From: Octopus sinensis
Taxonomy: Eukaryota
DNA: 9,990 nt
Assembly (NCBI RefSeq): GCF_006345805.1
Contig: NW_021827621.1
Coordinates: 1 to 9,990 of the forward strand
Direction of reading: 5' to 3'
This document shows positions 29 to 9,722 of the stretch, in pieces. Made by a program: the position numbers and the translations under genes. The stretch's first letter is position 1. Each line of letters opens with the position of its first letter. Below the pieces are notes generated by a model, which saw nothing but the letters and a program-made list of their open reading frames with translations, did no database searches and had not been told where the DNA came from.

Positions 29-897
29 TTTAAAATAAAGGACTCAATTAAACCGCTACTATCGTAGCTCTTGGGAACTTGAGAATCCACATGTTGCAGA
101 GTAACATCATGTTACATTACCAGGAGTTACAATATGATGCGGATTATCATGGAAAAAATTAGTCCGACCTCTCATTTTATGACTGACCCATCTCTGCTTG
201 AACTTTCTTATTTCTTTATTGCCCACAAGGGGCTACACACAAAGAGGACAAATAAGGACAGACAAAGTCGATTACATCGACCCGAGTGCGTAATTTATCG
301 ACCCCGAAAGGATGAAAGGCAAAGTTGGCCTCGGCGGAATTTGAACTCAGAACGTAACGGCAGACGAACTACCGCTTAGCATTTCGCCCGGCGTGCTAAC
401 GTTTCTGCCAGCTCAACGCTTTGAATTTTCTGCGACAATCTGTCATGCCAAGCAGTCAAGATGACTTTGAAGGTGTGGACATTGCCATGTAAGAGCCTAC
501 CTTAATAACATTTTGCCAAATTGGTGGATTGTACAAAAAGGTTCAATGGAATATTTTGTGTATACTGGACCTTACATTATTAGATACCATTTTTTGTTTG
601 TTATGGAGATACTTAAAAGATAAAATTTAGGGTACGAAACTGATAACAGTTGATAAATATCTGGTACTCATTGAACGAAAATGCATATAAATACCGAACA
701 AAATGTTTCATGATGTTTGCGATTCCAATGCTCCGCGTTATCAACAGAGCCTGGACCAAAATCATCATTTCAAAACCATGCGTTCACAAATATATTATAT
801 TCTGTCTGTTGTTTTGAAAATCAAATTTATTTTACTAAACACAGCCATTGCAATCATTCAATATGAGTATATGTACAGTTTTGGAGCCACTAACTAT
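29..897 (+). mobile_element. Decayed Tc1/mariner-superfamily DNA transposon (catalytic and C-terminal half of a transposase pseudogene), interrupted by a SINE at 209-420
   Basis: Manual translation: FKIKDSI(+1)NRYYRSSWELENPHVAE*HHVTLPGVTI*CGLSWKKLVRPLIL (29-179); after removing the SINE, LNFLRQSVMPSSQDDFEG (421-474); HCHVRAYLNNILPNWWIVQKGSMEY (480-554); LDLTLLDTIFCLLWRYLKDKI*GTKLITVDK...IERKCI*IPNKMFHDVCDSNAPRYQQSLDQNHHF (565-768). These follow in order the family motifs FKLNG-NRHN-W-ENPH, PGVTVWCG, RAYL-RWIG, SPDLTPLDFFLWGYLKDKVY. The FQQDGAP segment is deleted, and there are several stops and frameshifts. The right end (~897) is approximate. Confidence 0.85.
209..420 (-). mobile_element. 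tRNA-derived SINE, family A (near full-length, diverged)
   Basis: Reverse complement aligns with the copies at 973-1204 and 6385-6615. Flanked by an 11-bp TSD, TTGAACTTTCT (198-208) / TTGAATTTTCT (421-431), with 1 mismatch. Confidence 0.9.
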
Positions 898-900
898 AGC

Positions 901-1271
901 TATATTATAAACATTCATACATATGCACAAACACTTACATACACGAATATATATTAATATACATATATATAAGTCGGCGAGCTGGCAGAAACGTTAACGT
1001 GCCGGGCGAAATGCGTAGCTGTATTTCGTCGGCCATTACGTTCTGAGTTCAAATTCCGCCGTGGTCAACTATGCTTTTCATCCTTTGGGGGGTCGATAAA
1101 TTAAGTACCAGTTACGCACTGGGGTCGAAGTAATCGACTTAATCCGTTTGTCTGTCATTGTTTGTCCCCTCTGTGTTTAGCCCCTTGTGGGCAATAAAGA
1201 AATATATATTATGAACATTCATACACACACACACAGACACTTGCATACACCAATATATATTAATATACATA
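901..1271 (+). repeat. ~65-bp direct repeat pair (901-965 and 1205-1271) flanking the SINE
   Basis: tatattataaacattcatacatatgcacaaacacttacatacacgaatatatattaatatacata versus tatattatgaacattcatacacacacacacagacacttgcatacaccaatatatattaatatacata; roughly 85-90% identical by eye. Confidence 0.8.
973..1204 (+). mobile_element. tRNA-derived SINE, family A (full-length)
   Basis: A-box-like TGGCAGAAACG and B-box-like GTTCAAATTCC. Collinear with 6385-6615 and ends in AAAGAAATA. Confidence 0.92.
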
Positions 1272-2945: not shown

Positions 2946-2961
2946 TATATATATATATCTA

Positions 2962-3008
<47 letters not shown>

Positions 3009-3049
3009 TATATTATAATATATTATAATGTATGTATATTATATATATA
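2946..3049. repeat. (TA)n microsatellite / AT-only tract
   Basis: Directly visible. Confidence 0.95.
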
Positions 3050-3390: not shown

Positions 3391-3702
3391 TGTGTGCGTG
3401 TGTGTGTATGTATATATATATCTGTGTGCATGTGTGTGTTTGTGTATATACATATATATATATATATGTACATATGTATTTTGTATGTATGTGCTTCTTT
3501 GGTTATGTGTTTGTCCCCTTCTACCGCATGGCAAATTGTGTTAGTTTGTTTACGTCCCTTACATAAGCAATTCGGCAAAAAGAGACTGTTATAATAAGTA
3601 CAAGGCTTAAAATATGTAAATACTCTTCGACTAAACCAGTAAAGGCGGTGCCCAGCATGGCTGCAATCCAAAGCCTCAAACAAGCAAAAGATAAACGATA
3701 AA
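3391..3702 (+). mobile_element. SINE family B, microsatellite linker plus 3' module
   Basis: TG/TA linker (3391-3505), then tgtttgtcccc...gtttacgtccc...aaggcggtgcccagcatggc...aaacaagcaaaagataaa, collinear with ~9340-9565. Confidence 0.85.
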
Positions 3703-4202: not shown

Positions 4203-4293
<91 letters not shown>

Positions 4294-4330
4294 GTCTGTC
4301 TGTCTGTATGTCTGTCTGTCTGTCTGTCTT

Positions 4331-4392
<62 letters not shown>
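4190..4392. repeat. Compound (TATC)n-(TGTC)n-(TATC)n microsatellite
   Basis: Directly visible. Source of the LSIY repeats in ORFs 4172 and 4182. Confidence 0.95.
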
Positions 4393-4394
<2 letters not shown>

Positions 4395-4502
4395 ATTTCT
4401 TTACTACCCACAAGGGGCTAGCCACAGAGGGAACAAACAAGGACAGACAAACGGATTAAGTCGATTATATCGACCCCAGTGCGTAACTGGTACTTATTTA
4501 AT
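4393..4502 (-). mobile_element. SINE family A, 5'-truncated 3' fragment embedded in (TATC)n
   Basis: Reverse complement matches 6505-6615 (attaaataagtacc...gtaaagaaata). Confidence 0.9.
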
Positions 4503-4509
4503 AGCTAAG

Positions 4510-4575
<66 letters not shown>

Positions 4576-4786
4576 CCTACCTATCTGTCTGTCTGTCAGT
4601 CTTAAATGTCTACCTGTCTATCTGCCGATCTCTCTCTCTCTCTCTCTCTTTCTGAAGATATATATGCAGACACAGACACAGACACACATACATACAAACA
4701 CAAGCAAATTCGTATACGTGCACATACACACATACACACCCATACACACACACATCGTTTAGATTTGAATGCCGGGAAGAATAAAA

Positions 4787-4860
<74 letters not shown>

Positions 4861-4982
4861 ACTAACTAACTAACTAACTATCTATCTATATATCTGTCGA
4901 TCTATCTACAATTATGCGTGTGTATGTTTGTGTGTGTGAGTGAATGCATGTGTGTGTGTATGTGTGTGTGTGTGTGTGTGCA
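4510..4982. repeat. Microsatellite cluster: (TATC)n, (TC)n, (CA)n-like, (TATC)n(TAAC)n, (TG)n
   Basis: Directly visible at ~4510-4600, 4628-4650, 4665-4755, 4786-4890 and 4915-4982. Confidence 0.9.
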
Positions 4983-5211
4983 TACATATGGATACTCATA
5001 TCAACATGGAGTACCGTTCGGTATTCACGAACAAATTAGCTATATCTTCTGGTATTAATGTTCATGTAAACATTTTGTAACTCACGAGAGCAAAGAAATA
5101 TACACCAAACGTAGCAAATAGCCTTCCAAAGAACCGCCTCAAAAAGAAGCAGTTTCCCGGCATAGCAGCAATTCAATTACTGGATCCAGTAAAAGAAAAT
5201 TTAAAGACGCA

Positions 5212-5422
5212 ATGTATATATGTTTATATACATACATACATACATACACACACATATATATATATGTGCATATATATATGCATAATATATATCATATATT
5301 ATATAATATATAATATATTTATATATATTATATATATATAATATATATAATATATATTATATACATATATAATATATATATAGTATAATATAATTATACA
5401 CATATATATAATATATAATATG

Positions 5423-5457
<35 letters not shown>

Positions 5458-5498
5458 GATATATATATATATATATATAATATATATATATATATGTT

Positions 5499-5532
<34 letters not shown>

Positions 5533-5571
5533 ATCTAATATATATATATATATATATATACATATATATAT
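5212..5571. repeat. Long degenerate (TA)n tract
   Basis: ~360 bp that is almost exclusively A/T. Confidence 0.95.
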
Positions 5572-5575
5572 AAAG

Positions 5576-5876
5576 TGAAGGCGCATAGCTAAGTGGTTAA
5601 GCGTGAGGTTGTGAGCTCGAATCCCGGACCAGGCTGCGTGTTATGTTTCACGTTGCTCCAGTTCACTCAGCTGTAGAAATGAGTTGCGACGTCACTGGTG
5701 CCAAGCTGTATCGGCCGTTCCTTTTCCCTTGGATAACACCGGTGGCGTGGAGAGGGGAGGCTGGTATGCATGGGAAACTGCTGGTCTTCCATAAACAACC
5801 TTGCCCGGATTTGTGCCTGGGAGGGTAACTTTCTAGGTGCAATCCCATGGTCTGTGTCGTGACCGAAGGGGGTCTC
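5576..5876 (+). mobile_element. tRNA-derived SINE, family C
   Basis: A-box TAGCTAAGTGG (5586-5596) and degenerate B-box AGCTCGAATCCC (5614-5625) with a short spacing that suggests an internal deletion. GC-rich body inserted within (TA)n. Single copy in the window. Confidence 0.75.
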
Positions 5877-5892
5877 AGAATATATATATATA

Positions 5893-6116
5893 ACATACTT
5901 GGAAGAGGATGCGTGGCACTCTATAATATTACAATTTTACTTATCTCTGCTTAGTGCTCCCCCTCTGTACTCCAGATATTATCCAACCCTCTTGTTCTTG
6001 GTCTACTGCCGGCTAGCTCGGCTTCAATAATCCGCCTTGCAATTCTTTAATCCGACAGCCTAATCATATATCTGTAGTACCGCAGCTGTAAGCTTTCAAT
6101 GCGTTGGGATTAGAAT
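5893..6116 (-). mobile_element. RTE-clade-like LINE fragment: ORF C-terminus and 3' end
   Basis: Minus strand from 6106: QRIESLQLRYYRYMIRLSD*RIARRIIEAELAGSRPRTRGLDNIW, resembling the RTE C-terminal motif RIE-SQLRW(F/Y)GHV-RM-R-G-RPRGRPRTRWLDNI. Possible short tail CAAGTATGT. Confidence 0.7.
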
Positions 6117-7009
6117 CGGCCAGACGATATTTGCAAACGGTCTGACAATATTTGCAGAAGGCCAGACGATATTTGCAAACGGCCAGACAATATTTGCAAA
6201 CGGCCAGACGATATTTGCAAACGGCCAGACGATATCTGGAAACGGTCAGACGATATTTGCAAATGGCCAGACGATATTTACAAACAGCAAGACGATATTT
6301 GCAAACGGCCAGACAATATCTGCAAACGGTCAGGCGATATTTGCAAACAGCCAGATGATATTTGCAAACGGATGATATTTATAAGGCGGTGAGCTGGCAG
6401 AATCGTTAGCATGCTGGGCGAAATGCTTAGCAGTATTTCGTCTGCCGTTACATTCTCAGTTCAAATTCCGCCGAGGTCGACTTTGCCTTTCATCCTTTCG
6501 GGGTCGATTAAATAAGTACCAATTACACACTGGGGTCGATGTAATCGACTTAATCCGTTTGTCTGTCCTTGTTTGCCCCCTCTGTGTTTAGCCCCTTGTG
6601 GGTAGTAAAGAAATAGATATTTGCAAACGGCCAGACGATATCTGCAAACGGCCAGACGATATTTGCAAACGGTCAGACGATATTTGCAAACGGCCAGACG
6701 ATATCTGCAAACGGCAAGACGATATTGGCAAACGGTCAGAGGAAATTTGCAAACGGTCAGACGATATTTGCAAACGGTCAGGCAATATTTGCAAACTGCC
6801 AGACGATATCTGCAAACGGTCAGGTGATATTTGCAAACGGTCAGAGGATATTTGCAAACGTCCAGACGATATTTGCAAACGGCAAGACGATATTTGCAAA
6901 CGGCAAGACGATATCTGCAAACGGTCAGACGATATCTGCAAACGGTCAGACGATATTTGCAAACGGTCAAACGATATTTGTAAACAACCAGACGATACTT
7001 GCAAACGGC
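6117..7009. repeat. 21-bp minisatellite, consensus GATATTTGCAAACGGCCAGAC, ~31 units, split by a SINE
   Basis: Left arm: 11 exact-length units from 6126, one 17-nt unit (6357-6373) and a partial unit. Right arm: 18 units from 6616 plus a partial unit ending at 7009. Core palindrome TTTGCAAA. Confidence 0.97.
6385..6615 (+). mobile_element. tRNA-derived SINE, family A (full-length), inserted in the minisatellite
   Basis: A-box-like TGGCAGAATCG (6395-6405) and B-box-like GTTCAAATTCC (6459-6469). Candidate 11-bp TSD GATATTTATAA (6374-6384) / GATATTTGCAA (6616-6626). Confidence 0.93.
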
Positions 7010-7160
7010 ATGGTGTTTACTTGGCTCATCAGAGGTTTATTGCCAGTATACACTGAATAGGTTCGATGCTGAAAGCTGCAAGGCAGGGATGAGAATTAAT
7101 GTTGCGCGGACCGAGACACTGATCCTTTGGAAAAATTCTTCCCAGTGAACTCTGTATGCT
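6995..7160 (+). mobile_element. LINE reverse-transcriptase fragment, starting at the catalytic [Y/F]ADD position
   Basis: ILANGMV(+1 T at ~7016)LLGSSEVYCQYTLNRFDAESCKAGMRINVARTETLILWKNSSQ*TLYA aligns with the non-LTR RT motif LLFADD-VLL-SS---LQ--L-RF---C---GM-IN--KTE-L. Confidence 0.75.
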
Positions 7161-7587
7161 GGAGTGGGGGTGAAGGTTGGGGGTGGAAATCACTGCAAAG
7201 TTTATCTCAGAAAATCGCAACCCTGACATATTTAGACACTAACAGAATAACACTGACGTCATCAAAGTGACAAGGTAACAAAGGCAGAAGATCAGAGAGA
7301 ACATACTGGAATGTGTGAAACAAGGGATGTTATGGCGAACAACCAGGTGGAGTGGAATGTAACCAATATGATTCTAGCTAATAACATACATTCTTATCAC
7401 CAAACAGAACTGGTCTAGTTACTATCCGTTATAGGCATGCATGTATGCAGGGGAAGAGAGGGAAAGAGAGTTGAGTTAGTTAGTTAGGTAGATAGAAAGA
7501 AAAAAGGTAGTTGGATATAGGTAGAGATGAAGATAGCTAATAGAATGATACATAGATATATATTACGCAAAAAAAAAACACTAAAGG

Positions 7588-7589
<2 letters not shown>

Positions 7590-7624
<35 letters not shown>

Positions 7625-7773
7625 TGTGTGTGTGTGTGTGTGTGTATGTGTGTATATGTATATTATATATATCTATATATATATATATACACAAACACAC
7701 ATACATATATAAACATCTATATATGTATATATATATATATATATACACACAACACACATACATACATACATAT

Positions 7774-7825
<52 letters not shown>

Positions 7826-7925
7826 AAAACACATACATACATGCATACACATATATAGTGTATATTATATATAAACACAACACACAAAACACATACATAC
7901 ATATATAATTAGTATATAATATATT
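7590..7925. repeat. Compound (TA)n/(TG)n/(CA)n microsatellite block
   Basis: Directly visible. Source of six spurious ORFs in the track. Confidence 0.95.
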
Positions 7926-8289
7926 ACACAGGTGTGAATGTGTGTTGAGAGAGACAGACAGACAGAAGGGAAGATGTGGAAGGAAAAAGAGACAGACAAG
8001 GACAGACAGTCAGAAGGAGGGTGAAAGGGAGAGAGAAGGTGAGAGAGAGGCAGAGAGAGGGGGAAAAAGAACGAAGAATAAAAAAGTGAGAAAATACAAA
8101 AACTCAGTAGAATATCTAAAATAGAGTTACAAATGACAAGAAGCATTGCGTAATATGCCTGTCATTGTATGTACACTTAGGTGTATGTCCATCATATACT
8201 TACACACAAGTGAACATACACACACACACGCACACACACATGCGCGCGCACACACACACACATGCACACATACACACACCACACTCACC

Positions 8290-8665
8290 GTGGAGACGCA
8301 ATGGCCCAGTGGTTAGGGCAGCGGACTCGCGGTCGGAGGATCGCGGTTTCGATTCCCAGACTGGGCGTTGTGTGTGTTTATTGAGCGAAAACACCTAAAG
8401 CTCCACGAGGCTCCGGCAGGGGGGGTGGCGACCCCTGTTGTACTCTTTCGCCCCAACTTTCTCTCACTCTTACTTCCTGTTTCTTGTCCCCGACTTCCTA
8501 AGCAACCGCTGAGCCTGGATGCGCATTCATCCATCCGTCGATGCTCTCGGTGTCGGGGGTTGACCTGCTTTCTCTTCTGCGGGTCTTACAAATAGCAAAG
8601 GACCACGTTTCGGACTTCTCCCACTGGGACGAAGACCGCTTCGCTCGACAGCAACAGCAACAGCA
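8290..8665 (+). mobile_element. tRNA-derived SINE, family D (full-length, with (CAGCAA)3 tail)
   Basis: A-box TGGCCCAGTGG (8302-8312), B-box-like GGTTTCGATTCCC (8345-8357), tail at 8648-8665. 12-bp TSD ACCACACTCACC (8278-8289) / ACCACACTTACC (8666-8677), 1 mismatch. Inserted at the end of a (CA)n tract. Confidence 0.88.
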
Positions 8666-9126
8666 ACCACACTTACCAAATATATCATAGAGCATGTTGC
8701 TTGCTTGTTTGTTGATTTCTGTTTTAAAGCTGCAGCAAAGACATTTTTGATGAGAAAGCAGTGGTTATACTGAAAGAAGTGAAAATAGGCGAAAGCGGCT
8801 GAAACTGTGGTATCTCGTGATTTCAGTGTAATTTGCGCTTTCTCAGCAACAAGAACTCTGCTATCGAATGCCGCTGGATCGAAATTCCGTCAAACGGATA
8901 TAGTTTAACACTGACTCATCCATCAGTCAATGATGTCGCAAAAAGCTGGCAGGCGTCGAATAAATTTGCTATCAGTTAGGTAATTTTAGAGCTCAACATC
9001 TATACAAGGTGATTTTTCAGGCCGATTACCGCAGTTTACAGCGTTTAAAGCAACACATCCAAGTTAAGTTGGATGTACAAAATCATATTCATTAGAAAAA
9101 CTACTTCGGTCGTTAATAGTTTCGAT

Positions 9127-9565
9127 AGGAGCGGCTTTGTGGTAAGAAGTTTGCTTCCCAACCACATGGTTCCAGGTTCAATCCCATTGCGGGGCTACTG
9201 GATACATGTCTTCTACTACAGCCTCGGCCAAACAAAGTCTTGTGAGTAGAGTGGTAGGAGGAAACCGAAAGCCCATTGTATATACATATGTGTGAGCGTG
9301 TGAGTGTGTGCCTGCGTGTGCGTGCGCGTGTCTGTGTCTGTCTGTTTGTCTTGTTGTTTGTGCTTGTTCCCCACCACCACTTGCCAACTGGTATAGCTGT
9401 GTTTTGGTCCCCATAACTTTGCGGTTCGATAAAATAGATCGATAGAATAAGAACCAGACTTTAAAAAAATAAACAATAGGATCGATTCATTCAACTAAGA
9501 ATTTTCTAAGGCGGTGCCCCAGCATGGCCATAATCTAATTACTGAGACAAGTAAAAGATAAAAGA
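9127..9565 (+). mobile_element. tRNA-derived SINE, family B (near full-length, with internal TG microsatellite)
   Basis: A-box-like CGGCTTTGTGG (9132-9142), B-box GGTTCAATCCC (9175-9185). The two halves match the fragments at 2033-2131 and 3391-3702. Confidence 0.88.
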
Positions 9566-9577
9566 TATATACGAATG

Positions 9578-9722
9578 CATGTATGTGTGTGTATGTATGT
9601 ATGTATGTATGCATGTATGTATGTATGTACCTATGTATGTATGTATGTAGGCAGGTAGGTATGGAGATAGGTAGGTAGGTATATGTGAGTGTATGTATGT
9701 ATGTATGTATGTATGCCTACCT
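9578..9722. repeat. (TATG)n / (TAGG)n microsatellite
   Basis: Directly visible. Confidence 0.93.

What the first reader, a model, noticed from the sequence alone, without database searches (positions are those of the whole stretch)
6117..7160. A 21-bp minisatellite apparently amplified from the reverse-transcriptase active-site codons of a LINE
Seen: one frame of the unit reads QTIFANG. The last partial unit (ATA CTT GCA AAC GGC, 6995-7009) runs without a gap into ATG GTG and then, after one extra T, into LLGSSEVYCQYTLNRFDAESCKAGMRINVARTETL. Established: non-LTR RTs have the motif LLFADD-VLL-SS-LQ-L-RF-GM-IN-KTE. The repeat's I-F-A-N-G therefore sits exactly where L-F-A-D-D should be, and AAC GGC is two transitions from GAC GAC. 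The unit also contains GACGATAT, so an origin from TTT GCA GAC GAT ATG plus a short insertion is an alternative route. Inference: the ~31-unit array is a tandem expansion of the RT catalytic motif region. That would be a traceable birth of a minisatellite from a retrotransposon ORF.
Basis: partly seen in the sequence, partly recalled or inferred. Interest (0 to 1): 0.75.

Follow-up and report, generated by a model that had tools for sequence, protein, structure and literature searches.

The report
Minisatellite born from LINE RT codons
A 31-unit, 21-bp tandem repeat in this window is seven codons of a dead LINE reverse-transcriptase gene (the catalytic FADD box) copied over and over in place, which is a clean but ordinary example of a transposon fragment seeding a minisatellite.

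Summary

- **The array.** It runs 6121-7009 and holds 31 units of CAGACGATATTTGCAAACGGC. A 235-bp SINE (6381-6615) with a 7-bp target-site duplication splits it into two blocks.
- **The flanks.** Both flanks are reverse-transcriptase (RT) sequence, colinear with the closest relative found (P0003, on contig L001). The window reads GGG ATT AGA ATC GGC | [unit]n | ATG GTG (+1 T) TTA CTT GGC TCA TCA. L001 reads GGG TGT AGG ATC GGC | CGG CTG ATA TTT GCA GAC GAC | ATG GTG CTA CTT GGC TCA TCA.
- **The unit.** Its best match anywhere on L001, on either strand, is exactly the R-L-I-F-A-D-D codons (16/21; next best 13).
- **Collapse test.** Reducing the array to one unit gives one continuous alignment (75% identity, E 5e-35).

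New here: the + strand RT piece begins only about 15-25 nt left of the first unit. There it abuts an inverted (− strand) C-terminal RT piece of the same LINE family (6103→5930). The layout looks like a twin-priming 5' inversion. All 31 units carry N-G instead of D-D, so amplification followed decay of the copy.

Transposon-derived minisatellites are well documented, so this is a new member of a known kind. I could not test whether the array is single-locus, because no eukaryotic genome database was available.

The parts
5930..6103 (-). 3' (C-terminal) RT fragment of an APE-type non-LTR retrotransposon. Read on the minus strand: RIESLQLRYYRYMIRLSD*RIARRIIEAELAGSRPRTRGLDNIWS...
   Evidence: tblastn: P0121 aa 172-220 against 6103->5969, E 3e-8. 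P0007 and P0041 extend the match to 5942 and 5930. blastn: L002:554-694 against 6103->5975, 67% identity, E 6e-16. The minus-strand match does not continue right of 6103 (4/24 matches).
6096..6105 (.). Inversion junction between the minus-strand 3' fragment and the plus-strand internal fragment. TCAATGCG (6096-6103) is included in both alignments, so TCAAT may be junction microhomology.
   Evidence: The alignments overlap here. Plus-strand similarity falls to chance left of 6097 (11/36), and minus-strand similarity falls to chance right of 6103 (4/24).
6106..6120 (+). Five RT codons, GGG ATT AGA ATC GGC (G-I-R-I-G), immediately upstream of the amplified unit. The relative has GGG TGT AGG ATC GGC (G-C-R-I-G).
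   Evidence: 12/15 identical to L001 at the colinear position; P(>=12/15) = 1.2e-5.
6121..6380 (+). Array block A: 12 full 21-bp units (CAG ACG ATA TTT GCA AAC GGC = Q T I F A N G) plus the start of a 17-nt unit. The last 7 nt (6374-6380, GATATTT) are the left copy of the SINE target-site duplication.
   Evidence: TRF; pattern matches; unit table.
6381..6615 (+). SINE copy inserted into the array after the array existed.
   Evidence: 86-92% identical to the copy at 963-1210. Two more copies lie on the minus strand of the window. The alignment of the four copies defines the ends. 7-bp duplication GATATTT at 6374-6380 and 6616-6622.
6616..7009 (+). Array block B: the right copy of the duplication, the rest of the interrupted unit, and 18 full units. 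The last unit (6989-7009) reads CAG ACG ATA CTT GCA AAC GGC.
   Evidence: TRF.
7010..7175 (+). RT fragment downstream of the catalytic box: ATG GTG (M V), a 1-nt insertion in the T run at 7014-7018, then LLGSSEVYCQYTLNRFDAESCKAGMRINVARTETLILWKNSSQ*TLY... Homology fades after about 7167-7175.
   Evidence: phmmer: P0003, E 7e-5 against 1.84e9 proteins. tblastn: P0121 and P0003, 59-60% identity, E 1e-11. blastn: L001 and L002, 75-76% identity, E 5e-35 and 1e-30. Family HMM: 7017-7154, i-E 1.3e-9.
5873..5880 (.). Candidate left target-site duplication of the LINE insertion (TCTCAGAA), next to a (TA)7 run at 5881-5895 that may be the LINE 3' tail. The partner copy is at 7205-7212.
   Evidence: This is the only exact 8-mer shared by 7140-7300 and 5540-5960. 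About one such match is expected by chance, so it is only a candidate.
7205..7212 (.). Candidate right target-site duplication (TCTCAGAA). If real, it marks the end of the inverted RT fragment at about 7204.
   Evidence: Not statistically significant.

Best explanation
The array is a minisatellite that arose in place, inside a dead fragment of a non-LTR retrotransposon (LINE). It formed by tandem duplication and stepwise amplification of 21 bp: the seven codons R-L-I-F-A-D-D that hold the RT catalytic box.

Proposed order of events:
1. **Insertion (structure shown; mechanism inferred).** A heavily 5'-truncated LINE copy inserted with its sense on the minus strand. Its 5' part was inverted, most simply by twin priming. 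This left a direct 3' fragment (6103->~5896) joined to an inverted internal fragment (~6100->~7170-7204 on the plus strand).
2. **Decay (order inferred).** The dead copy mutated. The two catalytic Asp codons GAC GAC became AAC GGC, and R-L became Q-T.
3. **First duplication (inferred).** The 21 bp duplicated, plausibly by replication slippage or unequal exchange between the short direct repeat CGGC. That repeat now ends both the left flank (ATCGGC) and the unit (AACGGC).
4. **Growth (inferred from shared variants).** Repeated unequal exchange or slippage grew the array to at least several units.
5. **SINE insertion (shown).** A SINE inserted into the array with a 7-bp duplication.
6. **Divergence.** Units have diverged to a mean of 8% from their consensus.

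The array has no function that I can see. It is neutral repetitive DNA, and the 7-codon periodicity is a by-product.
For: - **Colinear RT on both flanks and in the unit.** Nucleotide comparison with L001 is. The collapsed-array alignment has E 5e-35.
- **Best match at the right place.** The 21-mer's best hit on L001 is exactly the RLIFADD codons, 16/21 against a next best of 13. P(>=16/21) at a fixed position is 1.2e-6.
- **Divergence fits.** The five differences between the unit consensus and L001 amount to 24%. The flanks differ from L001 by 25%. All five are shared by at least 27 of the 31 units, so they predate amplification.
- **The family conserves the box.** 103 relatives matched the motif pattern searched; about 87 read FADD, the rest FAND (13) or FADG (2). 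N-G in every unit therefore marks a copy that was already dead.
- **Stepwise growth.** Unit variants shared by several units and present on both sides of the SINE (A1 in 4 units, C11 in 7, T21 in 12) argue for stepwise growth before the SINE arrived.
- **SINE came later.** The SINE has a target-site duplication, and the restored empty site is continuous array.
- **Inverted arrangement.**. RT residues between about aa 52 and aa 172 of P0121 are absent from the window. A twin-primed insert would lack them; a simple 5'-truncated plus-strand copy would not.
- **Precedent.** Transposon-derived tandem repeats that start at or after insertion and grow by local duplication are common in human (PMC3389668).
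Against: - The closest relative is only about 75% identical in DNA and comes from an unrelated metagenome contig. No consensus of the window's own LINE family was available, so the ancestral state of the unit is inferred, not seen.
- I could not check whether the same 21-mer array occurs elsewhere in the source genome, or whether other copies of this LINE family carry it.
- Twin priming is documented mainly for L1 in human cells and was nearly absent for other LINEs tested (PMC4245944).
- The candidate 8-bp target-site duplication is no better than chance.
- The short-repeat slippage step is inferred from a 4-nt repeat only.
Confidence: 0.8

Rival explanations
1. The tandem duplication, or the whole array, was already present in the LINE template, or was made by the reverse transcriptase itself. 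In the second version the RT re-copied 21 nt repeatedly, by template slippage or jumping, close to the end of the second cDNA of a twin-primed insertion. The array would then have been born at insertion rather than afterwards.
For: The array starts only about 15-25 nt from the inversion junction, which is the point where the inverted cDNA ended. That proximity is otherwise a coincidence. For some LTR elements in human, tandem repeats existed in the element and spread by transposition (PMC3389668).
Against: - Every unit has N-G in place of the catalytic D-D. The RNA template would therefore have had to come from an already inactive copy.
- Variant subfamilies shared by several units indicate several rounds of duplication, not one burst.
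- The array is not at the very end of the fragment. About 15-25 nt of further RT sequence lie beyond it.
- No other copy of the element was available to look at.
Confidence: 0.1
2. The array belongs to a dispersed 21-bp satellite or minisatellite family, or to a composite mobile element that carries it. This locus would be either its founder or just one member. The RT origin could still hold, but the array would not be a single-locus event.
For: Nothing positive. It simply could not be excluded, because no eukaryotic genome collection was searchable. Transposon-derived repeats can spread (PMC9659126, listed; title and abstract only were seen).
Against: - Within the 10-kb window the 21-mer occurs nowhere outside the array.
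- A protein-level search with the array's longest ORF found nothing at E <= 0.001 among 5.8e9 proteins. This is weak evidence, because the window's own ORFs are not in that collection either.
Confidence: 0.08
3. An unrelated, pre-existing minisatellite happened to receive LINE fragments on both sides, and the resemblance of its unit to the FADD codons is chance.
For: LINE endonucleases often target AT-rich or repetitive DNA. The window is crowded with repeats.
Against: - The unit matches the RLIFADD codons at 16/21, in register with RT sequence on both sides. The left flank gives 12/15 and the right flank E 1e-30 or better.
- The collapsed array gives one continuous alignment.
- The joint chance of these matches at fixed positions is below 1e-10.
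Confidence: 0.02

Closest known systems
Transposon-derived minisatellites and satellites (for example the human survey of Ahmed and Liang 2012, PMC3389668)
   Same: An internal piece of a transposable element is duplicated in tandem at or after insertion. It then grows by local duplication, and short direct repeats at the unit edges fit slippage or unequal-exchange initiation.
   Different: - The unit here is exactly seven codons spanning the RT catalytic box, so its origin can be traced base by base on both edges.
- The host looks like an invertebrate genome rather than human. That is a guess from memory of its repeats and was not verified.
- The 31 units are far more than the two units typical of most human cases.
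LINE 5' inversion by twin priming (Ostertag and Kazazian 2001, as cited in PMC4245944)
   Same: An inverted internal segment lies upstream of a direct 3' segment. The inverted segment comes from further 5' in the element, the stretch between the two segments is missing, and there may be microhomology at the junction.
   Different: - The element is not L1.
- 5' inversions were almost confined to L1 in human cells in the experiments of PMC4245944.
- Target-site duplications and the 3' tail could not be established here.
Non-LTR retrotransposon reverse transcriptases with an upstream APE endonuclease (Pfam RVT_1, PF00078; Exo_endo_phos, PF03372)
   Same: The flanks are 59-60% identical in protein, and 75-76% in DNA, to RVT_1-bearing ORFs (P0003, P0121). 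A more distant relative (the P0041 locus, L004) has an Exo_endo_phos ORF upstream of the RT.
   Different: The window holds only two short, stop-containing and frameshifted fragments. The catalytic Asp-Asp is replaced by Asn-Gly. The clade (CR1, L2, Rex1, Jockey-like and so on) was not determined.

Membership tests
Non-LTR retrotransposon RT (Pfam RVT_1, PF00078) | Significant sequence similarity to proteins that carry the RVT_1 domain | tested here: met
   phmmer hit P0003, E 7e-5 in 1.84e9 proteins. P0003 and 100+ relatives carry PF00078. tblastn E 1e-11 (plus-strand fragment) and 3e-8 (minus-strand fragment). blastn E 5e-35 and 6e-16.
Non-LTR retrotransposon RT (Pfam RVT_1, PF00078) | The window's own fragment reaches the Pfam RVT_1 model | tested here: not met
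   hmmscan of the 52-aa frame-corrected fragment and of all plus-strand frames of the flanks gave no RVT_1 hit even at E <= 10. The fragment is short and decayed.
Non-LTR retrotransposon RT (Pfam RVT_1, PF00078) | Catalytic (F/Y)xDD box intact | tested here: not met
   All 31 units lack D-D. Most read A-N-G where relatives read A-D-D. The copy is dead, and stops and a frameshift are present.
Non-LTR retrotransposon RT (Pfam RVT_1, PF00078) | APE-type endonuclease encoded upstream in the same element | tested here: inconclusive
   Seen only in a distant relative's locus (L004: weak Exo_endo_phos ORF upstream of the RT). It is absent from the window because the copy is truncated.
Transposon-derived minisatellite | Head-to-tail array of units of about 10-100 bp, far beyond chance | tested here: met
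   TRF scores 377 and 564. 28 matches against 0 in 200 shuffles. 31 units.
Transposon-derived minisatellite | The unit is homologous to an internal transposon segment, and both flanks continue that element colinearly | tested here: met
   16/21 at the RLIFADD codons of L001, the best position on the contig. The collapsed array aligns continuously, E 5e-35. Left flank 12/15.
Transposon-derived minisatellite | The array arose at this locus and was not carried in by the element or present at many loci | not testable with these tools
   No eukaryotic genome collection was available. Searches of JGI metagenome contigs and GTDB genome contigs found nothing, and both collections are off-target.
Twin-priming 5' inversion of a LINE insert | The inverted segment derives from a more 5' part of the element than the adjoining direct 3' segment, and both come from one family | tested here: met
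   The plus-strand fragment spans about 13 residues before P0121 aa 1 to about aa 52. The minus-strand fragment starts at aa 172. P0121 is the best match for both.
Twin-priming 5' inversion of a LINE insert | Target-site duplication flanking the whole insert, and a 3' tail on the direct segment | tested here: inconclusive
   One 8-bp candidate (TCTCAGAA, 5873-5880 and 7205-7212) lies beside a (TA)7 run, but about one such match is expected by chance.
Twin-priming 5' inversion of a LINE insert | Microhomology at the inversion junction | tested here: inconclusive
   The two alignments overlap over TCAATGCG, 6096-6103. The ancestral sequences are unknown.
SINE insertion | Member of a multi-copy family with defined ends and a target-site duplication | tested here: met
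   Four copies in the window, 86-94% similar. The ends are defined by alignment. 7-bp GATATTT duplication. There is no tRNA or Rfam match, so the SINE class is unassigned.

The most novel reading that the evidence does not exclude
The array was seeded by the retrotransposition machinery itself. While finishing the second cDNA of a twin-primed insertion, the LINE reverse transcriptase slipped back repeatedly over 21 nt. That would explain why the array sits only about 15-25 nt from the inversion junction. It would be a retrotransposition-coupled route to minisatellite birth.
Probability: 0.07. Interest if true: 0.6.

Novelty: new member of a known kind. Interest (0 to 1): 0.3.

Why it matters
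This locus shows every stage of a minisatellite's life in one place:

- the donor codons survive on both edges;
- the mutations that came before amplification can be read off;
- variant subfamilies record stepwise growth;
- a later SINE insertion gives a relative time mark.

That makes it a neat teaching or benchmark case. Repeat annotators would probably mask the array as a simple repeat and miss the split LINE.

It does not open a new question. Transposable elements are already known to seed a large share of tandem repeats (23% of human minisatellites and satellites; PMC3389668). The closeness of the array to a LINE inversion junction is the only feature that hints at something less ordinary.

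Tried and rejected
- **Pfam on the RT fragment and flank frames:** nothing relevant.
- **Rfam and ARAGORN on the window:** nothing.
- **Word-indexed protein search with the 43-aa fragment:** no candidates.
- **Same search with the array's longest ORF (DDICKRP frame):** no hit at E <= 0.001.
- **Exact-ORF look-ups to identify the source assembly:** not on record.
- **SINE strings in the paper library:** no paper.
- **21-mer (1.25 units) in JGI metagenome contigs and GTDB genome contigs:** no match. Both collections are off-target for an animal genome.
- **Family HMM against all six frames:** found only 7017-7154, so it showed no RT residues between about aa 52 and 172 of P0121 and none elsewhere in the window; it also missed the minus-strand fragment that tblastn and blastn detect.
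- **My first reading of the left flank.** I took it as a long plus-strand continuation (...AAVSFQCVGIRIG aligned with ...GSGISIGGCRIG). This was rejected for everything left of about 6097. There the plus-strand similarity is at chance (11/36), and the minus strand carries a significant RT C-terminal match. Only the last 15-25 nt are plus-strand RT.
not needed. That part of the unit aligns with the R-L-I codons.
- **Hairpin or slipped-strand idea.** The D->N change creates the palindrome TTTGCAAA, and four units fold with z = -4.1. A tetramer of the relative's unit folds about as well (z = -3.9), so this does not discriminate.
- **Higher-order repeat structure among unit variants:** no regular pattern.

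Full report
**1. What is in the sequence**

Tandem Repeats Finder reports two 21-bp arrays, 6117-6371 (12.1 copies) and 6616-7009 (18.8 copies). The consensus CAGACGATATTTGCAAACGGC, with up to 3 mismatches, occurs 28 times, all in this region. It occurs 0 times in 200 shuffles.

The gap between the two blocks is a 235-bp SINE copy (6381-6615). It is 86-92% identical to another copy at 963-1210, and two more copies lie on the minus strand of the window. Aligning the four copies fixes its ends and shows a 7-bp duplication, GATATTT, at 6374-6380 and 6616-6622. Joining the flanks gives an uninterrupted array of 31 units, one of them 4 nt short.

The last unit runs into ATG GTG. After one extra T it continues as LLGSSEVYCQYTLNRFDAESCKAGMRINVARTETLILWKNSSQ*.

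**2. Is the right flank really a reverse transcriptase (RT)?**

Pfam did not see it, and the word-indexed protein search found no candidates. A full phmmer scan of 1.84 billion representatives with window:7002-7145 found P0003 (E 7e-5, 58% identity). P0003 is a 208-aa RT fragment reading ...GCRIGRLIFADDMVLLGSSEGDLRNALNGFAAECCKVGMRVSVAKTETLVLSRK....

P0003 and more than 100 relatives carry PF00078. One relative's locus (L004) has an Exo_endo_phos ORF upstream, so the family is an APE-type non-LTR retrotransposon. tblastn of these proteins against the window gives E 1e-11 for 7017-7157.

**3. The decisive comparison**

The DNA that encodes P0003 (L001) can be set beside the window around the catalytic box:

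| | five codons upstream | the 21 bp | downstream |
|---|---|---|---|
| L001 | GGG TGT AGG ATC GGC | CGG CTG ATA TTT GCA GAC GAC | ATG GTG CTA CTT GGC TCA TCA |
| window | GGG ATT AGA ATC GGC (6106-6120) | [CAG ACG ATA TTT GCA AAC GGC] x31 (6121-7009) | ATG GTG T TTA CTT GGC TCA TCA (7010-) |

- The unit matches the seven codons R-L-I-F-A-D-D at 16/21.
- Sliding the 21-mer over the whole 1,334-bp contig on both strands, this is the top position; the next best scores 13.
- In the second relative that has M-V after the box (L005), the same position ties for top at 13/21.
- In two more distant relatives the signal is lost (10-11/21), as synonymous divergence would predict.
- The left flank matches at 12/15. 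At fixed positions, P(>=12/15) = 1.2e-5 and P(>=16/21) = 1.2e-6.
- With the array collapsed to one unit, L001:916-1103 aligns continuously to window 6096..7153 (143/190 identical, E 5e-35). L002, the DNA of P0121, aligns to 7005..7167 (E 1e-30).

The unit is the R-L-I-F-A-D-D segment of the RT gene, amplified where it lay.

**4.

Left of 6103 it is the minus strand that encodes RT, and it is the C-terminal region. RIESLQLRYYRYMIRLSD*RIARRIIEAELAGSRPRTRGLDNIWS aligns with [49 protein letters not shown] (P0121 aa 172-220). tblastn gives E 3e-8 and blastn gives E 6e-16.

That minus-strand match stops at 6103 (4/24 beyond it). The plus-strand match stops at about 6097 (11/36 beyond it). On the right, RT similarity fades after about 7167-7175. 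Residues of about aa 52-171 of P0121 were found nowhere in the window.

So the LINE-derived DNA is two pieces joined head-to-head:
- an internal piece on the plus strand, from about 13 residues before the box to about aa 52;
- a 3' piece on the minus strand, from aa 172 onward.

Read on the minus strand, this is the layout of a 5'-inverted LINE insert made by twin priming. The eight bases TCAATGCG at the junction fall in both alignments, which may reflect microhomology.

Three cautions apply:
- 5' inversions were nearly restricted to L1 in human cells in the experiments of PMC4245944.
- The only candidate target-site duplication (TCTCAGAA, 5873-5880 and 7205-7212, the left copy beside a (TA)7 run) is what chance alone would give.
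- A later rearrangement cannot be excluded.

**5. Order of events**

- The five positions at which the unit consensus differs from L001 are shared by at least 27 of the 31 units, including both changes that turn D-D into N-G. Five in 21 equals the 25% divergence of the flanks.
- Of the 103 relatives that matched the motif pattern searched, about 87 read FADD; the rest read FAND (13) or FADG (2), none the window's FANG. The copy was therefore already dead and mutated when amplification began.
- Variants shared by several units (A at position 1 in 4 units, C at 11 in 7, T at 21 in 12) occur on both sides of the SINE. The array thus grew in several steps and had diversified before the SINE arrived.
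- Mean divergence of units from the consensus is 8%, with 39 transitions and 14 transversions.
- The first duplication plausibly used the short direct repeat CGGC that ends both the left flank and the unit. That fits the slippage or unequal-exchange model discussed for transposon-derived repeats (PMC3389668). This step is inference.

**6. Rivals**

- **Chance adjacency to an unrelated minisatellite.** Effectively excluded.
- **Origin inside the element or during reverse transcription.** This would explain why the array lies so close to the inversion junction. It is disfavoured by the N-G state of every unit and by the stepwise variant pattern.
- **Membership of a dispersed family.** Could not be tested, because none of the searchable DNA collections holds animal genomes. 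The 21-mer was absent from JGI metagenome contigs and GTDB genome contigs, which says little.

**7. Comparison with what is known**

Transposable elements are a documented major source of tandem repeats. At least 23% of human minisatellites and satellites derive from them, and they start at or after insertion and grow by local duplication (PMC3389668). This locus is a particularly legible instance and not a new kind of thing. It has no evident function.

Interest is modest (0.3). The one less ordinary possibility, that the RT itself seeded the array at a twin-priming junction, I rate at about 7%.

**8. Limits**

- The source organism is unknown. From memory only, the SINE families and the very high microsatellite density resemble octopus genomes; nothing here verifies that.
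- The LINE clade was not determined.
- The ancestral unit is inferred from a relative that is 75% identical, not from the family's own consensus.

Noticed in passing
window 963-1210 (+), 6381-6615 (+), ~203-450 (-), 4388-4502 (-): Four copies, one of them partial, of a ~235-bp SINE-like family, 86-94% alike. The copy inside the array has a 7-bp GATATTT target-site duplication. There is no tRNA or Rfam match.
   Followed up: partly
window 5575-~5872 (+): Another SINE-like element with a tRNA-like head (A box TAGCTAAGTGG; B-box-like GCTCGAATCCCGG). It ends next to a (TA)7 run at 5881-5895, tail-to-tail with the minus-strand LINE fragment. ARAGORN and Rfam are silent on it.
   Followed up: no
window ~8290-8520, ~2020-2100, ~9040-9110; also 3651-3700, 5156-5205, 9518-9567: Further tRNA-like or SINE-like stretches, and a three-copy repeat family (D15). 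The window is a mosaic of short interspersed repeats. From memory they resemble octopus genome repeats; this was not verified.
   Followed up: no
whole window (for example 1649-1736, 2946-3049, 4203-4393, 4510-4594, 4787-4980, 5215-5572, 7590-7930, 8214-8288, 9575-9715): Very high microsatellite density, 17 TRF rows in 10 kb: (TA)n, (TG)n, (TCTA)n, (TATC)n, (ATGT)n and (GTA)n.
   Followed up: no
window 5873-5880 and 7205-7212: An exact 8-mer, TCTCAGAA, placed where a target-site duplication of the inverted LINE insert would be expected. About one such match is expected by chance.
   Followed up: partly
window 6121-7009 (every unit): The G->A change that turned the first catalytic Asp codon into Asn (GCAGAC -> GCAAAC) also created the 8-bp palindrome TTTGCAAA in each unit. 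Multi-unit strands fold better than shuffles (z = -4.1), but a tetramer of the relative's unit does too (z = -3.9).
   Followed up: yes
L001 (ENA ERZ23491055), L003 (ERZ28614307), L005 (JGI 3300019863): Close relatives of this animal-type LINE RT sit on short contigs of assemblies labelled as metagenomes. These are presumably host or eukaryote DNA in those samples.
   Followed up: no
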